A stretch of 63,049 nucleotides of DNA, counting the filler, from Octopus bimaculoides (lineage: Eukaryota), in assembly GCF_001194135.2 (NCBI RefSeq). It is 7 parts of 6 records of this genome, joined end to end, with 100 filler letters (N's around TTAATTAATTAA, not from the genome) between each part and the next. Parts side by side here need not be neighbours in the genome. Positions count along the whole stretch, not along the records: positions 18,376 to 25,193 come from NW_026323026.1; 6 more parts are not named here. The stretch is one strand, 5' to 3'. Shown piece by piece: positions 11,500 through 25,799 of the stretch (the first letter of the stretch is position 1; every line of letters starts with the position of its first letter). Under the pieces are notes generated by a model. The model searched no databases, was not told the origin of the DNA, and worked only from the letters and a program-made list of their open reading frames with translations. Position numbers and translations under genes: made by a program.

Positions 11500-11671
11500 T
11501 ATGCATATAAATATATATTATGCATATACATACGTAGCTGTACACCCCACAAAGATATATATATATATACATACATATATGTACATACATATATGTGTAT
11601 ATATGCAGCATATCTCTCTCTCTCTTTTCCTCACTCTCTTTCCCCTCTCTCTCACTCTTTCTCTATATATA

Positions 11672-18331: not shown

Positions 18332-18521
18332 NNNNNNNNNNNNNNNNNNNNNNNNNNNNNNNNNNNNNNNNNNNNTATATATAATGTACAACGGGCTTCT
18401 TTCATTACTGTCTACCAAATGTGCTCACAAGGCATTGGTTGGCTCCAGGCTATGGTAGAAAACACTTGCCCAAGGTGACGCGCAATGGAACTGAACCAGA
18501 AACCATGTGGTTGGTAAGTAA

Positions 18522-19325
18522 GCAATAGCGTGCCTAGCGATGCAACTACGTATTCCAAGCTGTAAATACCAGCCGATGCTCGTTTAATCGAAACTGCAGC
18601 AGTATGTACTTCACTGCTGCTATAAGCACGTACTTGCGGCGGAAACAAAAAACCTGAACATGTCAGTACGAAACAATGGCGACAAAAATAAGCTCCATAA
18701 CATAAATCTGTACCCGGCGACGCAACAGCGTGCCTAGCGCCGCAAAAAACGTGCCCAAAGCCGCAACTACGTATTCCAAGCCGTGAAAACCAGCTGATGC
18801 CCGTTTATACGAAACTACGATAGTATGTGCGTCACTGATACCATAAGTACGTAATTGCGACCGAAACAATAAGCCTCAGGCCGTAAGTACGAAACAATGG
18901 CGACAAAAATAAGCTCCATAACATAAATCTGTACCCGGCGACGCAACAGCGTGCCTAGCGCCGCAACTACGTATTCCAAGCCGTAAATACCAGCTGATGC
19001 CCGTTTATACGAAAGTGCGGCAGTATGTGCGTCACTGCTGCCATAAGTACGTACTTGCGGCTAAAACAACAAACCTGAACACGTAAGTACGAAACAATGG
19101 CGACAAAAATAAACTCCACAAAGTAAATCTGTACCCGGCGACGCAACAGCGTGCCTAGCGCCGCAAAAACATGCCCAAAGCCGCAGCTACGCATTCCAAG
19201 CTGTAAATACCAGACGATGCCTGTTTATACGAAACTGCGGCAGTATGTACTTCGCTGCTGCCATAAGTACGTACTTGCGGCCGAAACAACAAACCTGAAC
19301 ACGTAAGTACGAAACAATGGCGACA
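18522..19325. repeat. Hierarchical tandem array: 40 diverged 20-nt monomers in units of 200/221/200/>180 nt
   Basis: Units start at 18522, 18722, 18943 and 19143 (GCAAYAGCGTGCCTAGCG). Units 2 and 4 carry an extra monomer GCAAAAACRTGCCCAAAGCC. Confidence 0.95.
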
Positions 19326-20029
19326 GATAGGTTTATCTGAGGTTCACGCAGAGTGAAACTATTCTGCATGTTCCCGTTCATTGTCTGGGCATTGCTGACT
19401 TCTGAAGCTGTTGTTAGGTGTCGGACAGATTCATCTATTGGCCAAGACTATAGTGAGGATTGTCCCACCAGCCTGCTTCAATCAGGCTGGTGGGGCAGTT
19501 TTCCTTTGTCTAGTGGCTGTGGAAAAAGAGGTTGTATGGTGAACGAGGCTAAAAGCTATGAGGACAGAGGAATTCCACTTTGGTGGGGGCCTCCTTGACT
19601 TTTTAAAGTTTCAATACAAAGGAAAGGGATGGTAGAGGGGGTGTCCTGTCCCCCTGGGTGAAAATAACAAAAATCCCAAGAGCAGATGACATCATTGTAA
19701 AGTGTAGACCTGAAAATCGAAGAATAAGAGCTGGAGTGTGCAATTGTTCAGGGAGATCTTAGATGGTGAGGTTCCTTGTTTGGTCCCAGAGGTGCTTCTA
19801 TATCATGAGGGTCACATCACTATCATCTTTTTTGAAACTGATCTTTTCCTTTATTTCTTTTCTTGTAAACTTGTATTTATGTGTTTTTATTGCATCATTC
19901 CTACACTTTGTCTGCTTCAGTATTGTTCATCTCCTTCAGCACTCTGATGACAAACTCATTATCAAGCTATCACATGCTAATTTAATCAGGAGCAATGTTA
20001 TTTTGATGTTTGCTGACAACTCACCTCAA

Positions 20030-20390
20030 ATCTCAAGAATCTTTCTTCAGATTCTGGCAGAATCTAGGATGGAATGTTTTCTGCAGGTCATCAATGCAAA
20101 TTTCAATTCCAATTTCTTTCAGTCTTTTTGGTAGCATTTTAAGTGTGGCGCCAACCCTAACCAATTCCTACAGCAATAATTGTTGTCTTCGTCTTACGCT
20201 CTCTCCTCAGCTCTCTGGTGAGATCCTCATATTTCCCAATTTCTTAAATTTCTTTGCTATCAACCCTGCTATTACAAGGAATTGCAAAATCTATGACCTT
20301 ACACATTTTTTTGTCCTCAAAATTCATGTCCGGTCTTCTTGCTTCAATAGTATGGGGAGGTCCGATAAATAAGATCCCATAATTCTTGTT
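20030..20390 (-). mobile_element. R4/Dong-like (RLE) LINE C-terminal fragment, degenerate
   Basis: Minus strand: IEARRPD...KVIDFAIPCNSRVDSKE..IGKYEDL.RELRR...LQK, the restriction-like endonuclease PD..D..K region, with frameshifts. Confidence 0.7.
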
Positions 20391-21049
20391 CTTTGTCACT
20401 ATCATTACCAGTAATCATGATAATAGTCAGTGAATTATGATGAATATGTTGGTCGTGGAGATGATAATGTTTACGAGGAGGAAACATGAAGACTTCAAAA
20501 GTAATTCCTTATTGATTTTCACAAGAATTTATTTGTTAGAAATTTCCGAAACTAGAAAAGAAAAGAAAAAATCATTGATAAAGACTAAGGAGTTCCTGAT
20601 CATATANNNNNNNNNNNNNNNNNNNNNNNNNNNNNNNNNNNNNNNNNNNNNNNNNNNNNNNNNNNNNNNNNNNNNNNNNNNNNNNNNNNNNNNNNNNNNN
20701 NNNNNNNNNNNNNNNNNNNNNNNNNNNNNNNNNNNNNNNNNNNNNNNNNNNNNNNNNNNNNNNNNNNNNNNNNNNNNNNNNNNNNNNNNNNNNNNNNNNN
20801 NNNNNNNNNNNNNNNNNNNNNNNNNNNNNNNNNNNNNNNNNNNNNNNNNNNNNNNNNNNNNNNNNNNNNNNNNNNNNNNNNNNNNNNNNNNNNNNNNNNN
20901 NNAAGATTCTTAGAAAGAGGGACAAAGACTAACACTGATGTATGAAATGTAGTTTTTATAATGTCAGGGACTTGTTGGTTGGAGGAGTTAACACCTCCTA
21001 CTAGCATGTTATTTTCATATTTCTTGCGACCAAGGATTATATATATATA

Positions 21050-21530
21050 TCATCATCATCGTTTAACATCCACTTTCCTTGCTAGCATGGGTTGGACAAT
21101 TTGACTGAGGACTGGCAAACCGGATGGCTGCACCAGGCTCCAATCTGATCTGGCAGAGTTTCTACAGCTGGATGCCCTTCCTAAAGTCAACCACTCCGAG
21201 AGTGTAGTGGGTGCTTTATGTGCCACCAGCACGAAGGCCAGTCAGGCGGTACTGGCAATGGCTGTGTTCAAAATGGTGTTTTTTGGATGCCACCTGCACA
21301 AGAACCAGTCCAGCAGCACTGGCAACGACCTCACTCGCATGTTTTCTAACGTGCCAGTAAAGCGATGCTGGTAACAACCATGCTCAAATGGTGCTATTTA
21401 TGTGCCACTGGCATGGAAGCCAGACAGCTGCTTTGGCAATGATCAAGCTTGGACAGTGTTGTTAGTGCTCCACTGGCACAGGTGCCAGTCATTGAATATG
21501 ATTCAATTACGATTTCGATTTCACTTGCCC
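21050..21530 (-). mobile_element. SINE family D (GGTTGGCGTTAGGAAGGGCATCCAGC box, (GAT)n tail, internal ~60-65-bp diverged repeats)
   Basis: CATCATCATCGTTTAAC tail at 21050 and repeated TGCCAC..GCA..RGCCAG units. Related pieces at ~21545-21672(+), 22660-22815(+), 28704-28880(-). Confidence 0.75.
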
Positions 21531-22076
21531 CAACAATAAGTATATATGATGCTTGGTTGGTGTTAAAAAAGGCATCCAGCCCCAGAAACCATGCCAAAGC
21601 AAACAGTAGAGCTTGGCATAGTTATCTAGCTGACCAGCAGCCAAAAGGGATGGAAGATATTAAATGATGATGGAAGGTTGCGGGGGTGGGTGGAACAAAC
21701 AGAGGAAATTCAAATCAACACATAAGTGTGTGTGTGTATGTGTGTATCATTGTAAATATAGTCTATCAGCACAGTTATCTCTCTTTCATATATATAAATA
21801 TATATATAATCATCATTATATATATGTATATATATATATATATATATTGAAAAAATGGGTACAGATGGCTTTTGGTGGGGATACTTAGAGCCAAAATTTG
21901 TTGAAAGGCTTTTCAACTTCACAATGCAGTTTATGGTAACTTGGTAGCTGTTTGATAGAGTCTGAAGGTTTGTGCTGTTCTGAGTTCAAATCCTGCAAAG
22001 ATCAACTTTGCCATTCATCTTTCCAGGATTGATAAAGGACCAACCTAGCACCAATGTTGGTCCCTCATCTACTTTA

Positions 22077-22113
<37 letters not shown>

Positions 22114-22217
22114 AACTACATAGCTCAAATCCATGCTCTAAGCCTGGTAGGACACAAGCACTACACAAACCATTCTTCTTCCATAAAACCAAGATAACAG
22201 TTTAATAATATATTTAC

Positions 22218-22291
22218 CATTTTTCTCACAATATTCTATGGCATCTTCTTGGGTTGCAAAATCCAGTTTCAAGTTTGATAAAGGATCAGCT
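22218..22291 (-). CDS. NDUFS4: NDUFS4 exon, 74 nt: (T)ADPLSNLKLDFATQEDAIEYCEKN(G)
   Basis: Matches the ADPLSN..L.F.T.EDA....EKNG motif. Acceptor gaatttctag, donor AATG|gtaaat. Phase 2 in and phase 1 out, compatible with the upstream exon; same size as human exon 4. Confidence 0.96.
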
Positions 22292-23113
22292 CTAGAAATT
22301 CAATAAAATTGATAATATTGACACATTGTTGAATTATTATTAACATTATTATTATCGTTATTGTTGTGACTGTCTCTTTTTCCTTCTTTCTCATTCCATA
22401 AATAATATAACTAAGAGTATTATTATCCAATATGTTCTTCCCTCTGACCTGGGGTTAAACAACAACCCTTAACCTTCCTATGTGACATCCCTTCTTTGCT
22501 CCTTTAATCAATACAGCAATGCTGCTTCCTTTTCCAACCTGGCAGCTTTGTAAAACCTTCGACCACTGCATACTGTCTGCAGCCACTCTTTACCATGCCC
22601 CATCATGATCGTGTGTTATTCAACATATATGCTTCCATTTTTAAAGATGACAGGTAACCCAACCCCCCATGCCAGTCCATGTAGAAACACCATGCTGGTG
22701 CCATGTAAAAAACACCCTGTAAAGTGGCTGCCGTTAGGAAAAGCATCTGGCTTAGAACCAAGCCAGGCTGGAACCCAGTACAGCTCTGGTCAAACCATCT
22801 AACCCATGCTAGCATGCTGGCTTGGATATTTCGATGGACATCAAAGGATGAATAGGAAGAGAATGTGATTTGAGAGAGATTTGACTGCTATTTCTAAAAA
22901 ATAGACTGACCATGTTGCAGCTCCTTCCTTCACTGGCCCAACATTTATAACGTTTAAAACCATTTTATAAGAACTGATGTTTGCATCAATCACTCACTGT
23001 TCCAAATCTTTTAACAAAACTCATCAAATTTTCCTTAAAAATTAGAAAGAAAATTTTTATCAGAGTTTAAAGAAGAAAAACAAAAACAGAGAATAGAAAA
23101 TGAAACCACTTAC

Positions 23114-23289
23114 GTGGAGCACCAACCCATGAGGGGATTCTCCCATCTTCCTTGAGTGTCGAATTCAATCATCCACCTTCTTGTGCCAAAGCTACCACTT
23201 TGCATGGCATTACGAGCCGGAACATAAATACGAGCCATGCGGGTCTTAATCTCTTCTTCTGGGACTCCATTTAAAGACGACACATCCAC
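23114..23289 (-). CDS. NDUFS4: NDUFS4 core exon, 176 nt: [58 protein letters not shown](T)
   Basis: The translation carries the NDUFS4 signature motifs GVPEE.IKTR, I.VPARN.MQSG and [11 protein letters not shown]. Acceptor cttctgtag, donor AC|gtaagt (phase 2). Confidence 0.97.
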
Positions 23290-24057
23290 CTACAGAAGTT
23301 TAATTAAGGGTTAATGCATTAATGAGAATTTCTGAAATTCAGTCAAGCTCATATCAGACGAGAGTCAATTAAACCAACCCCACACTCCTCGTTATTCTTT
23401 TTCAGACAGGCACAACCCTAGTTGAGAAGCTTGCTTCACAACCTCATGCCTTTAGGCTCTGTCACACTTTGCTGCAGCTTGGGCAAGTGTCTCCAAGCTG
23501 ACTAAAGCCTGATCAGTGCATTTGGTCAACAGAAACTGAAAGAAACCCATCATATATGTATATTCATGCACGTGTGTGTGTATTCTTGACATACAAGTAT
23601 TAGAAATGACAAAGTATATACATAGATAAAGATATATACACATCCAGCCAAAGAGATAAAATGGCTTTAAGAAGAATCTTTGACAGGTGCAAAGTCTGAC
23701 GGCCGTTTTGAGAAAATGTAGGTTGGTATGGGTGAATTAACTGCAACCATAACCATCATCTACATTTATATAATAATTATGTACATATGTCCCATCCATG
23801 CTAAGCAGATCCATGGAAAGCAGATGTTGAACAATGATGATGATGATGATATAATTTATTATGATGGACTTCTTTCAGTTTCTGTTAACTAGATCCACTC
23901 AGAAGACTTTGGTCAACCCAGGGCTATGGTAAGAGGGACTAGCCCAAGTGTCGTGCAGTGGTATTGAACTCAAAACCAAACTTCTTAACCACACCACCAT
24001 GCCTACCCCTATGGAAAGTTAGTCAATCAAAACCAATGTGAAGTGAAGAAGCCTTAC

Positions 24058-24136
24058 CATTTCCTCAGCCAAGATTGAGACATCTTGTTCCTTGGGAGGA
24101 ACTTGGAGTGGTATAGGTCGATCTGTATTAAAACAC
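24058..24136 (-). CDS. NDUFS4: NDUFS4 internal exon (equivalent to vertebrate exon 2), 79 nt: (x)CFNTDRPIPLQVPPKEQDVSILAEEM
   Basis: Minus-strand acceptor cccttatatttcag and donor ATG|gtaagg. Ends in phase 0, joining the next exon in frame. The 79-nt size and phases (2 in, 0 out) match human exon 2 as I recall it. The peptide itself is poorly conserved. Confidence 0.8.
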
Positions 24137-25799
24137 CTGAAATATAAGGGAAACATTTCATTCTCATGTTTGGCCCCTGGAAAGACTAGGCAAACCCTCA
24201 GAAACAGTAAAAACACACCCCGAAACAGCCGGTACAATGCTTGGAGTCAGTGTAATCGCTGTTTTTGTCATAATTCAACCCTTTTGGTTATCCTTTATTG
24301 ATCAGACCTTTGAGCAAAGGCATTCCAACCATGACCATCCCACCTTTTCAAATGTACAACGAACTCAGGACTATATTAACCAATGCATTCTTGATTAAGA
24401 TGTTAGGATGTGCCTTGATGGAGGTTTGCCTGCTGCTGTTGCTAGCAGATCAATGAACCTCCAGTTGCCTTTGGTCAAATCAGTTCAGTTCAAAGCGGAA
24501 GGGGTGAAGAATAGCGAAATGACCCTTAAAACTAGAGAGAAGCCCATAGCTTTGTCCCAGATACAAGGTTAGTTATTATTATAATTACTATTTTATATTC
24601 AATTGATAATTGCAGACAGACAGACAGACAGACAGATCGATATTCGCGCCTGCAACGAGATTCTGCCATTTATATCTAACTAAGTTCACAAGTTTTTGTT
24701 CTAAAAGAGTAATGAAATTTTAAAAAAATTAAAAATGGTGATTTTTGCGTCAGGTTCTATTTTGAAAGGAGCAAGTGAAAACATTTGGTAGATCCGAGTC
24801 TAAAAAAGAACATTTTGACAGAATAAACTCGTGTGACATCGTAAACATTTCAACAACTGGACCGAAACACACTTTAAAATGTTGCACGCACATACCGTAC
24901 ACACACATATATATAAAGGATATGAGGGGTTTAGTTCAACTGTGATCCAAACGAATAGGTACGCCGAGTAAGTACTATGATTAGTCACCCGTTAGGTTCC
25001 AAGTTCACAGCTGAGGCTGGAGTTAAGGATCTGTATTTGGCTTCCATGTTAGCAGGGATACATTAGAGGAAAGGGACATAGAAAACCAAAACTTAGTTTT
25101 GACTCCTTTTCTTCTCTCTCTCTCTCTCTCTCTGTGTGCGTGTGTGTGTGTGAGGAAAAGACACGTCTACATCCTGAGTGTGAATTTTCTATTNNNNNNN
25201 NNNNNNNNNNNNNNNNNNNNNNNNNNNNNNNNNNNNNTTAATTAATTAANNNNNNNNNNNNNNNNNNNNNNNNNNNNNNNNNNNNNNNNNNNNCGAACAT
25301 AACAGATGAGCATTATTTGTAATTCAACGGTACAACAGCGTAAGACTACCCTTTCAAATATACTTACATTGTGATTTCTGCAATGTGGTGCATAAATTGT
25401 CAAGTAAATGAGACGCATCTTTGCCTCCACTGATTCACTTGCAAAGTGTTTATTTATTTATTTATTTATTTATGTGTTTCAGCCAAGTGGCTGCGGTCAT
25501 GCTGGTGCACCACCGTTGAGTAAAATTATTTCGTTGCAGACCTCCTTTGAGTCTTTTTATTATCACTGCGACACACATAGTCCCCAGTTGGTAACATTGA
25601 TTGCAAGGCCTTCCCAGATGAGTGACTGGTTGTTCTAAGACATTTATCGATTGTAAATTTTGTTTGCATAATTACCTATCGGTATAGTGGTCATTTGCAA
25701 ACTTCAGAGGCGACACTTTCATTTCCCTTTACTCCAAACGTCACACGTTGTTATTTCAATTGGGTCATGCCCTTCCAATTGCTATAGATCCGTAATGCA

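What the first reader, a model, noticed from the sequence alone, without database searches (positions are those of the whole stretch)
18522..19325. Three-tier CpG-rich tandem array built from 20-nt monomers
Seen: the 800 bp parse exactly into 40 consecutive 20-nt monomers (one is 21 nt) sharing a skeleton of roughly RYAA-N-TACG-W-A-C...GCC (e.g. GCAACTACGTATTCCAAGCC, GTAAATACCAGCTGATGCCC, ATAAGTACGTACTTGCGGCC, GTAAGTACGAAACAATGGCG). Ten strongly diverged monomers form a 200-nt unit that is copied faithfully. Units 2 and 4 carry an eleventh monomer, giving an A-B-A-B ~420-nt super-period. The array keeps many CpGs, unlike the CpG-poor region just downstream. Inference: this higher-order organisation resembles alpha-satellite HORs or iteron/protein-binding arrays of transposons and viruses, and differs from the microsatellites around it. 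It is not CRISPR (no constant repeat with unique spacers) and has no long ORF. It could be a dispersed satellite seed, the internal array of a rolling-circle element, or a regulatory landing pad just 3' of NDUFS4.
Basis: partly seen in the sequence, partly recalled or inferred. Interest (0 to 1): 0.8.

Follow-up and report, generated by a model that had tools for sequence, protein, structure and literature searches.

The report
Octopus 20-bp nested tandem repeat
This is a real but probably ordinary non-coding tandem repeat (20-bp units nested inside 200-bp units) in retroposon-rich DNA just downstream of the Octopus bimaculoides NDUFS4 gene; it is missing from the same spot in three related octopods and shows no sign of a function.

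Summary
The piece is a whole 6,818-bp Octopus bimaculoides scaffold carrying part of NDUFS4 on the minus strand. The repeat at 18522-19325 is real. It parses into 40 in-phase monomers (39 of 20 nt, one of 21 nt). The 20-nt periodicity is significant inside a single 200-nt unit (z = 12.4).

Ten monomer types, about 46% identical to each other, form a 200-nt unit present about 4 times. The units are only 84.5-92.6% identical, so they are not faithful copies. The 420-nt third tier rests solely on an extra monomer in units 2 and 4.

CpG observed/expected is 1.47, against 0.19-0.43 in the flanks, and CpGs in the array are barely hypermutable.

The array lies about 1.5 kb beyond the NDUFS4 stop codon. 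It is wedged between the 5' ends of a truncated SINE and a LINE fragment. It is absent from the orthologous place in O. vulgaris, O. sinensis and Argonauta hians.

I found no relative in any searchable collection, no RNA family, no fold and no coding signal. No cephalopod genome could be searched, so copy number is unknown.

Best reading: a lineage-specific hierarchical minisatellite, possibly brought in by a retroposon. The one odd feature is its strict 20-nt register.

The parts
18384..18523 (-). tRNA-derived octopus SINE copy. It lacks about 27-30 nt of its 5' head, its 5' end abuts the array, and its (TA)n tail runs to the scaffold end at 18376.
   Evidence: It is 84-85% identical to a SINE copy in collinear position and orientation in O. 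vulgaris (L001 27437-27577) and O. sinensis (L002 26701-26841), truncated within 4 nt of the same point. Other copies, such as L001 7446-7603, keep the full head.
18522..18721 (.). Array unit 1: ten 20-nt monomers, A to J.
18722..18942 (.). Array unit 2: eleven monomers. The extra monomer 'a' at 18742-18762 is the only 21-mer.
18943..19142 (.). Array unit 3: ten monomers. Used as the reference unit for the periodicity tests.
19143..19325 (.). Array unit 4: monomers A, a and B to H, plus 3 nt (ACA). It is truncated where it meets the LINE fragment.
19326..19800 (+). Decayed, 5'-truncated fragment of a LINE ORF2 C-terminus (the zinc-binding region downstream of the reverse transcriptase) plus 3' region. 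The 3' limit is approximate.
   Evidence: It is homologous to L001 11470-11790, whose ORF hits Pfam zf-RVT (PF13966) at 32.6 bits against a cut-off of 27.5. Pairwise BLASTP gives E = 2e-7 and includes the ETILH....C motif.
19461..19497 (+). 12-bp perfect GC-rich stem-loop inside the LINE fragment. It is not a Helitron terminus.
   Evidence: There is a homologous stem-loop with a different stem sequence at the same place in the O. vulgaris LINE copy.
19801..19912 (-). T-rich stretch (A-rich on the minus strand). It is the tail or degenerate microsatellite remnant at the 3' end of the next retroelement. Orthology with O. vulgaris fades out here.
19913..20606 (-). Decayed C-terminal fragment of a non-LTR retrotransposon with an RPD...D...K nuclease-like motif. 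It is orthologous to O. vulgaris and O. sinensis.
   Evidence: 82-83% identity to L001 23156-23877. Assignment to the restriction-like-endonuclease (R2/R4/Dong) group rests on my recollection of the motif and was not tested.
20607..20902 (-). Assembly gap of 296 N that hides the last coding exon and stop codon of NDUFS4.
   Evidence: The gap corresponds to L001 22860-23155, and the O. vulgaris CDS ends at L001 22980.

Best explanation
The array is an orphan, non-coding, hierarchical minisatellite (a short satellite-like array) specific to the Octopus bimaculoides lineage.

Inferred history:
- A 20-bp tandem repeat diverged until its monomers shared only a skeleton.
- A block of ten monomers was then re-amplified as a 200-bp unit to about four copies, by replication slippage or unequal exchange.
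- In some units monomer A was duplicated in phase, giving 220 bp.
- The 7-15% difference between units puts that amplification roughly 10-25 million years ago, with no homogenisation since.

Shown:
- It lies about 1.5 kb beyond the NDUFS4 stop codon, in a spacer built of retroposon fragments.
- That spacer has turned over completely since the split from O. vulgaris and O. sinensis.
- The array is wedged between the 5' ends of a truncated SINE and a truncated LINE fragment, with 2-3 nt of shared bases at each junction.

Inferred: retroposition events delimited the array or brought it in. Its CpGs survive because this DNA, unlike the NDUFS4 gene body, is not methylated in the germ line, not because CpGs are selected.

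No function is indicated.
For: - Architecture and statistics of the repeat.
- No coding, RNA or structural signal. ORFs are at most 78 aa. A 20- or 200-nt period cannot hold a reading frame. There is no Rfam hit. Folding z-scores are -0.08 for DNA and +0.71 for RNA.
- Species and locus. There is a 100% match to the partial O. bimaculoides NDUFS4 on a contig of exactly 6,818 bp.
- Absence at the orthologous place. Alignment with O. vulgaris and O. sinensis stops at about 19890-19913, and the 1.4 kb holding the array and LINE fragment has no counterpart within 10 kb. Argonauta also lacks it.
- Flanking retroposon 5' ends.
- CpG behaviour. Divergence at CpG sites relative to other sites is 1.6-fold between array units and 4.7-fold in the flanking O. 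bimaculoides / O. vulgaris alignments. Only 9 of 43 variable columns are CpG transitions.
- Published O. bimaculoides methylome. Fewer than 10% of CpGs are methylated. They cluster in the bodies of expressed genes and are low in intergenic DNA and transposons (PMC9476566).
- Dating. The calibration is a Jukes-Cantor distance of 0.09 for about 25 My, and the species split is put at 13-33 My (PMC13282606).
- Such arrays are common. The Argonauta NDUFS4 intron holds an unrelated 20-nt minisatellite with 131/151-nt super-periods.
- Slippage or unequal exchange as the origin of minisatellites, and their ties to transposable elements, are established knowledge (review PMC6947457).
Against: - Copy number in the genome is unknown, so 'orphan' means only 'no relative in anything I could search'.
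- The register is stricter than neutral decay predicts. At least 74 substitutions separate the ten monomers, yet none has changed length. P is about 4e-6 at the local indel/substitution ratio of 0.168, and 0.025 at a conservative ratio of 0.05.
- The array abuts the LINE fragment directly, and both are missing together in the sister species. One insertion event would explain that more economically than independent events.
- If the flanking SINE is orthologous with the O. vulgaris copy, the array cannot simply be older DNA into which the SINE inserted.
Confidence: 0.55

Rival explanations
1. The array is the 5' body of a LINE-tailed mobile element, and the block from 18522 to about 19800 is one retroposed insertion. 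It could be an internally deleted LINE whose 5' UTR is made of about 200-bp CpG-rich promoter monomers, as in mouse L1. It could be an SVA-like composite with a VNTR body and a LINE-derived 3' module. Or the reverse transcriptase may have switched template from LINE RNA to a repeat transcript. Insertion would have deleted target DNA, and the 5' end would have been joined inside a pre-existing SINE by microhomology.
For: - The array and LINE fragment are contiguous, with ACA shared at the junction, and are jointly absent between the same two anchors in O. vulgaris and O. sinensis.
- The O. vulgaris SINE keeps about 4 nt more of its 5' end than the O. bimaculoides copy (read directly from the alignment). 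That fits a junction formed with a small loss of target DNA.
- The LINE fragment carries a family-conserved 3' stem-loop that could serve recognition by the reverse transcriptase.
- The divergence between units could pre-date the insertion.
- LINE-mediated spread of tandem repeats is documented (PMC6947457).
Against: - No target-site duplication was found.
- Base composition differs between array and LINE fragment. The array is rich in A and C on the + strand, while the LINE fragment is rich in G and T.
- The array abuts an ORF2 C-terminal fragment, not ORF1.
- No second copy was found in about 98 kb of octopod DNA.
- 5'-truncated LINE fragments are ubiquitous, so chance adjacency is possible.
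Confidence: 0.27
2. The array is a functional, phased protein-binding platform, comparable to iterons, an insulator or a CpG island. A sequence-specific protein would bind every 20 bp (about two helical turns) in unmethylated DNA between two convergent genes.
For: - The 20-nt register is strict despite about 54% monomer divergence, and out-of-phase indels are few.
- Skeleton positions 1, 3, 4, 6, 8, 13 and 18 are conserved.
- CpG is retained.
- The F monomers contain a 12-nt palindrome, AAGTACGTACTT.
Against: - It is not conserved at the orthologous site in three octopods.
- The intergenic spacer lies between gene 3' ends, with no promoter expected.
- CpG retention is explained by the known methylation landscape.
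- GC content is 47.6%, below the classical CpG-island threshold.
- The monomers overall show only weak reverse-complement symmetry.
- Noticing the array because it is in register may inflate the register statistic.
Confidence: 0.08
3. The array is the internal tandem array of a Helitron or Helentron-type non-autonomous element, like those that carry satellite-like arrays through oyster genomes.
For: - There is mollusc precedent (PMC7492417).
- A GC-rich hairpin lies downstream, followed by CTAG then T (read from the sequence).
- Helitrons are present in octopus genomes.
Against: - That hairpin lies inside the region homologous to a LINE ORF2 C-terminus, and another copy of that LINE has a homologous stem-loop.
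- No 5' terminus, conserved left or right flanks or Rep/helicase remnant were found.
Confidence: 0.04
4. The array is an assembly artefact. It, or its junctions, would have been mis-joined or collapsed in a short Illumina-era scaffold that ends 146 bp away.
For: - The piece is a 6.8-kb scaffold with a 296-N gap and ends in a SINE tail.
- The array cannot be checked against a second assembly here.
Against: - The units differ at about one site in ten, which short reads and mate pairs can resolve.
- The flanking SINE matches the collinear SINE of the sister species.
- An artefact would not create a 20-nt periodicity.
Confidence: 0.04

Closest known systems
Minisatellites / VNTRs with variant repeats, and short dispersed satellite-like arrays
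   Same: The unit is 10-100 bp and the array is 0.8 kb. It is non-coding, strand-asymmetric in composition, lineage-specific, embedded among transposable elements, and attributable to slippage or unequal exchange.
   Different: The monomers are far more diverged (about 46% identity) than usual variant repeats. They are organised into a re-amplified ten-monomer block and kept in exact 20-nt register. Polymorphism between individuals is unknown.
Higher-order repeats of alpha satellite
   Same: There are two nested periods: diverged monomers inside a longer unit that is the unit of amplification.
   Different: The higher-order units are only 84.5-92.6% identical, against typically 95% or more. 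There are four units rather than kilobases to megabases. The monomer is 20 bp, not about 171 bp. Nothing indicates a centromere, and there is no sign of ongoing homogenisation.
Monomeric 5' UTR of mouse LINE-1 (about 200-bp CpG-rich promoter monomers)
   Same: It has about 200-bp CpG-rich tandem units in a variable, truncated number, physically joined to LINE sequence on the same strand.
   Different: Here the array abuts an ORF2 C-terminal fragment, not a tether and ORF1. No full-length element was seen. The resemblance is recalled from general knowledge, not tested.
SVA / LAVA composite retroposons of hominoids
   Same: The order along one strand is an antisense SINE fragment, then a CpG-rich VNTR, then a retroelement-derived 3' module.
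   Different: No target-site duplication, no poly(A) and no second copy were found. The SINE is probably older host DNA rather than part of the element.
Helentron-borne satellite-like arrays of oysters (PMC7492417)
   Same: This is a mollusc genome with short arrays of a few units scattered in gene-rich DNA.
   Different: No Helentron termini or flanks were found, and the unit structure (20 bp inside 200 bp) differs.
20-nt minisatellite in the Argonauta hians NDUFS4 intron (L003 13541-14208)
   Same: It has a 20-nt monomer, a length of about 0.7 kb and super-periods (131/151 nt), and it is in an octopod.
   Different: The sequence is unrelated, it is free of CpG, its monomers are much more alike, it has out-of-phase partial monomers, and it sits at a different position.

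Membership tests
Minisatellite / VNTR | Head-to-tail repeat with a unit of about 10-100 bp in an array of hundreds of bp to kb | tested here: met
   There are 40 in-phase 20-nt monomers over 804 bp. The periodicity has z = 12.4 within one 200-nt unit.
Minisatellite / VNTR | Copy-number variation between individuals | not testable with these tools
   Only one assembly of the species was available.
Higher-order-repeat satellite DNA | Diverged monomers forming a longer unit that is itself tandemly repeated | tested here: met
   Ten monomer types with 45.7% mean identity form a 200-nt unit repeated about 4 times.
Higher-order-repeat satellite DNA | Higher-order units nearly identical (about 95-100%) through ongoing homogenisation | tested here: not met
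   Units are 84.5-92.6% identical.
Higher-order-repeat satellite DNA | Long arrays and/or high genomic abundance | not testable with these tools
   No cephalopod genome search was available. Locally there are 0.8 kb, and no copy in about 98 kb of other octopod DNA.
Helitron / Helentron-borne array | Element termini with a 3' subterminal hairpin, conserved flanks on both sides of the array, and a characteristic insertion site | tested here: not met
   The only strong hairpin lies in LINE-homologous sequence, and a homologous stem-loop sits in another copy of that LINE. The flanks are a SINE and a LINE fragment.
Composite VNTR retroposon (SVA-like) or LINE with monomeric 5' UTR | Tandem array physically joined, on one strand, to a retroelement-derived 3' module | tested here: met
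   The array runs directly into the LINE ORF2 C-terminal fragment at 19323-19326.
Composite VNTR retroposon (SVA-like) or LINE with monomeric 5' UTR | Target-site duplication and 3' tail flanking the whole block | tested here: not met
   There is no direct repeat of 9 nt or more between 18376-18535 and 19600-19960.
Composite VNTR retroposon (SVA-like) or LINE with monomeric 5' UTR | Multiple dispersed copies with the same internal junctions | not testable with these tools
Iteron / viral origin repeats | Array next to a replication-initiator gene or inside a viral or plasmid genome | tested here: not met
   The flanks are octopus retroposons and NDUFS4. Exact scans of viral, metagenome and prokaryote collections gave no real match, only one chance 17-mer.
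CpG island (classical criteria) | Longer than 500 bp, CpG observed/expected above 0.6, G+C of at least 50%, usually at a promoter | tested here: inconclusive
   Length is 804 bp and observed/expected is 1.47, but G+C is 47.6%. It lies between the 3' ends of convergent genes in the sister species, and methylation was not measured.
Structured RNA gene array | Match to a known RNA family, or folding better than shuffled sequence | tested here: not met
   Rfam gave no hit in the array. Folding z-scores are -0.08 and +0.71.

The most novel reading that the evidence does not exclude
The strict 20-bp register and the direct fusion to a LINE 3' fragment could together mean that this is the promoter or binding-site array of a previously undescribed octopus retroelement. 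That element would be a LINE-tailed, VNTR-bodied composite, or a LINE with a monomeric 5' UTR, whose 20-bp modules are phased binding sites for a host or element protein. This locus would be one of many copies.
Probability: 0.12. Interest if true: 0.6.

Novelty: new member of a known kind. Interest (0 to 1): 0.27.

Why it matters
As it stands it matters little. It is one more lineage-specific tandem repeat in a genome that is about half repeats.

It does illustrate three points:
- The NDUFS4 downstream spacer has been completely rebuilt by retroposons and microsatellites since the O. bimaculoides / O. vulgaris split.
- CpG-rich repeats can persist in octopus intergenic DNA, because methylation there is confined to gene bodies.
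- The public O. bimaculoides NDUFS4 models are truncated by an assembly gap.

It would matter more if the 200-bp unit proves to be dispersed with a constant junction to the LINE fragment. It would then define a new composite retroelement in a clade where LINE activity in the brain is under discussion. The exact 20-bp phasing would then point to a binding protein worth identifying.

Tried and rejected
1. Relatives through predicted proteins.
   - The 75-aa array ORF found no candidate among 5.8 billion clustered proteins.
   - Among 1.84 billion representatives it found only one weak hit, E = 1.5e-4.
   - That hit is a tandem-repeat ORF in a bacterial genome and is a chance match.
2. Exact look-ups of two window ORFs on public contigs found nothing.
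3. Exact scans for array 17- to 31-mers in viral contigs, JGI metagenomes and prokaryote genomes found nothing, apart from one chance 17-mer.
4. Origin of monomer A from the tRNA-like SINE head, which had looked plausible by eye. The local alignment score of 12 is below the shuffled mean of 14.5. Rejected.
5. The array as a fully palindromic repeat. Only monomer F, and partly B, is self-complementary, and array-wide reverse-complement identity is at most 0.34. Rejected.
6. Helitron terminus at the 19461-19497 hairpin. Rejected, because it is part of the LINE.
7. Target-site duplication around the array + LINE block. None found.
8. Shared strand composition of the array and LINE fragment as evidence of co-retroposition. 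The compositions differ.
9. Decayed array in O. vulgaris next to the orthologous SINE. No similarity, no tandem repeat and no motif hits.
10. Reaching the neighbouring O. bimaculoides scaffold through the downstream chitin synthase gene.
11. Literature searches found no description of this repeat or of cephalopod satellite DNA.

Full report
**Source and setting**

The piece (18376-25193) is an entire 6,818-bp scaffold of Octopus bimaculoides. Exons translated from its minus strand match, at 100%, the partial NDUFS4 protein XP_014790341, recorded on a contig of exactly that length.

I fetched the NDUFS4 loci of three relatives through their proteins:
- L001: O. vulgaris
- L002: GCA_006345805.1, which I take to be O. 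sinensis
- L003: Argonauta hians

Aligning the piece to them gives the following:
- The 296-N gap at 20607-20902 corresponds to L001 22860-23155.
- The gap therefore hides the last coding exon, since the O. vulgaris CDS ends at L001 22980.
- The array lies about 1.5-2.3 kb beyond the stop codon.
- In O. vulgaris the next gene is a chitin synthase on the opposite strand. The spacer therefore lies between two gene 3' ends.

**The observation**

The parse into monomers is correct:
- 18522-19322 holds 39 monomers of 20 nt and one of 21 nt (18742-18762). Three further bases follow.
The most informative positions are 1, 3, 4, 6, 8, 13 and 18.

The periodicity is far beyond chance:
- Across the array, identity at every multiple of 20 is 0.38-0.45. 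The expectation is 0.26, and other lags give 0.21-0.29.
- Inside a single 200-nt unit, where copies of the unit cannot contribute, the mean is 0.444. In 2000 dinucleotide-preserving shuffles it is 0.259 +/- 0.015, giving z = 12.4.
- No other period between 8 and 25 stands out.

TRF reports only the 200-nt period, with score 749. The monomers are too diverged for it to report period 20.

- The 200-nt units are not faithful copies. Pairwise identity is 84.5-92.6%.
- The 420-nt tier exists only as the presence of an eleventh monomer in units 2 and 4. That monomer is a diverged duplicate of A, matching it at 15 of 20 positions.
- Alternate units are no more alike than adjacent ones. Several sites group units 1+4 against 2+3. 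With 1.9 copies this tier is nominal.

**What the array is not**

- It cannot code. The periods are not multiples of three and the longest ORF is 78 aa.
- Pfam finds nothing in those ORFs.
- Rfam finds nothing in the array.
- A unit folds no better than shuffled sequence on either strand.
- Only monomer F carries a real palindrome (AAGTACGTACTT). The array as a whole is not self-complementary.
- There is no relative in 5.8 billion clustered proteins or 1.84 billion representatives. The single weak hit is a bacterial repeat ORF.
- Exact scans of viral contigs, metagenomes and prokaryote genomes also found nothing.
- The motif occurs nowhere else in the piece or in 92 kb of the three related loci.

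None of the available tools searches cephalopod genomes. The copy number of this repeat in O. bimaculoides therefore remains unknown, and that is the main gap in this report.

**Flanks**

Left flank:
- 18384-18523 is a copy of the abundant tRNA-derived octopus SINE on the minus strand.
- Its (TA)n tail is at the scaffold end. Its 5' end, lacking about 27-30 nt of the head, sits against the array.

Right flank:
- 19326 to about 19800 is a decayed fragment of a LINE ORF2 C-terminus on the plus strand.
- It is homologous to L001 11470-11790. The ORF there hits Pfam zf-RVT above threshold.
- Pairwise BLASTP gives E = 2e-7 and includes the ETILH....C motif.
- The strong hairpin at 19461-19497 lies inside this homology. 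The O. vulgaris copy has a stem-loop with a different stem sequence at the same place. The hairpin is therefore a feature of the LINE, not a Helitron end.

Both neighbours thus point their truncated 5' ends at the array. Two to three bases (GC on the left, ACA on the right) are shared at each junction. This is the usual look of retroposon 5' junctions, though it is weak evidence on its own.

Further right:
- 19801-19912 is A-rich on the minus strand.
- 19913-20606 is a decayed retroelement C-terminus with an RPD...D...K motif, orthologous to O. vulgaris and O. sinensis at 82-83% identity.

**Comparison with the sister species**

- Orthology with O. vulgaris and O. sinensis ends near 19890-19913.
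- Beyond that point those species have about 1.7 kb of (TGA)n and (CAT/CAC)n microsatellite and an unrelated element with a zinc-knuckle ORF.
- No array, no tandem repeat of this kind and no motif hit is present there. Argonauta also lacks it.

About 3.5 kb further on, both species carry a SINE copy with these properties:
- It is in the same orientation.
- It is the best match to the piece's SINE, at 84-85%.
- It is truncated within 4 nt of the same position.
- The three other copies I could inspect keep a full head.

I take this SINE as probably orthologous. If so, everything between it and the microsatellite has been replaced in one or both lineages. The array + LINE block would then be new in the O. 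bimaculoides lineage, or lost in the other.

**Age and CpG**

- Units differ by 7-15%.
- The published calibration is a Jukes-Cantor distance of 0.09 for about 25 My, and the species split is put at 13-33 My (PMC13282606).
- This places the unit duplications at roughly 10-25 My, with no later homogenisation.

The CpG contrast is real:
- There are 66 CpGs in 804 bp, observed/expected 1.47. The flanks show 0.19-0.43.
- It is explained by mutability. Between array units, CpG sites are only 1.6 times as divergent as other sites. In the flanking O. bimaculoides / O. vulgaris alignments the factor is 4.7.
- Only 9 of 43 variable columns are CpG transitions.
- This fits the published methylome. Fewer than 10% of CpGs are methylated. 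They cluster in the bodies of expressed genes, with little methylation in intergenic DNA and transposons (PMC9476566).

A CpG-containing seed amplified in unmethylated DNA next to a methylated housekeeping gene gives exactly this picture. No selection for CpG is required.

**The one oddity**

- The ten monomer types are only 45.7% identical. A minimum spanning tree needs at least 74 substitutions.
- Yet all ten are exactly 20 nt, and each scores best in phase.
- The flanking orthologous DNA shows 0.168 indels per substitution. At that ratio about 12 indels are expected, and the probability of none is 4e-6. At a ratio of 0.05 the probability is 0.025.
- Among the four units there are 43 variable columns but only one out-of-phase indel. 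There is also one in-phase whole-monomer indel.
- The Argonauta 20-nt minisatellite, by contrast, contains out-of-phase partial monomers.

Caveats:
- Flank indels are inflated by microsatellites.
- The array was noticed because it is regular.

I record this as unexplained. It is the only support for a length-constrained, protein-binding reading.

**Verdict**

The best-supported reading (0.55) is a lineage-specific, non-coding, hierarchical minisatellite. It was generated by slippage or unequal exchange and is bounded by retroposon 5' junctions.

The main rival (0.27) is that the array and the LINE fragment are one retroposed block. That would make the array part of a LINE-tailed element. It would be the most economical account of their joint absence in the sister species. 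It lacks a target-site duplication, shared composition and any second copy.

The remaining readings:
- functional phased binding array: 0.08
- Helitron cargo: 0.04
- assembly artefact: 0.04

A single BLASTN against the O. bimaculoides chromosome assembly would decide between the first two readings. Interest is low to moderate.

Noticed in passing
window 20607-20902: The 296-N assembly gap corresponds exactly to O. vulgaris L001 22860-23155 and hides the last coding exon of NDUFS4. Both public O. bimaculoides protein models (132 and 166 aa) therefore end in spurious residues read from intron or transposon sequence. They also lack the first exon, which lies beyond the scaffold end.
   Followed up: yes
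window 19461-19497 and L001 about 11600-11630: Two diverged copies of the same LINE family carry a stem-loop at the same position with different stem sequences and a similar loop. This looks like a covarying structural element in the 3' part of that LINE.
   Followed up: partly
L001 23884-25556 (also L002 about 23140-24770): In O. vulgaris and O. sinensis the 3' end of the orthologous retroelement fragment runs into about 1.2 kb of degenerate (TGA)n. This is followed by about 0.4 kb of its complement, (CAT/CAC)n, giving an inverted pair of microsatellites. O. bimaculoides keeps only a short degenerate remnant (about 19800-19890).
   Followed up: partly
L003 13541-14208: Argonauta hians has an unrelated, CpG-free 20-nt minisatellite (GTCCAGTACCAGACACCTCT, about 35 copies) with 131/151-nt super-periods in an NDUFS4 intron. 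This shows that 20-nt hierarchical minisatellites are not rare in octopods.
   Followed up: partly
window 18384-18523 versus L001 27437-27577 and L002 26701-26841: The SINE next to the array and its probable orthologues end within 4 nt of the same 5' position. The DNA immediately beyond that end is completely unrelated between the species.
   Followed up: partly
window 19043-19062 and 19263-19282 (F monomers): The F monomers contain a perfect 12-nt palindrome, AAGTACGTACTT, with a central CpG. It is the only strongly self-complementary monomer type.
   Followed up: partly
L005 5001-5540: The only weak protein-level hit to the array ORF is a 179-aa ORF made of 51-aa tandem repeats in a bacterial genome (GCA_946151075.1), between a TetR-family gene and a methyltransferase gene. 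It is unrelated to the octopus array.
   Followed up: no
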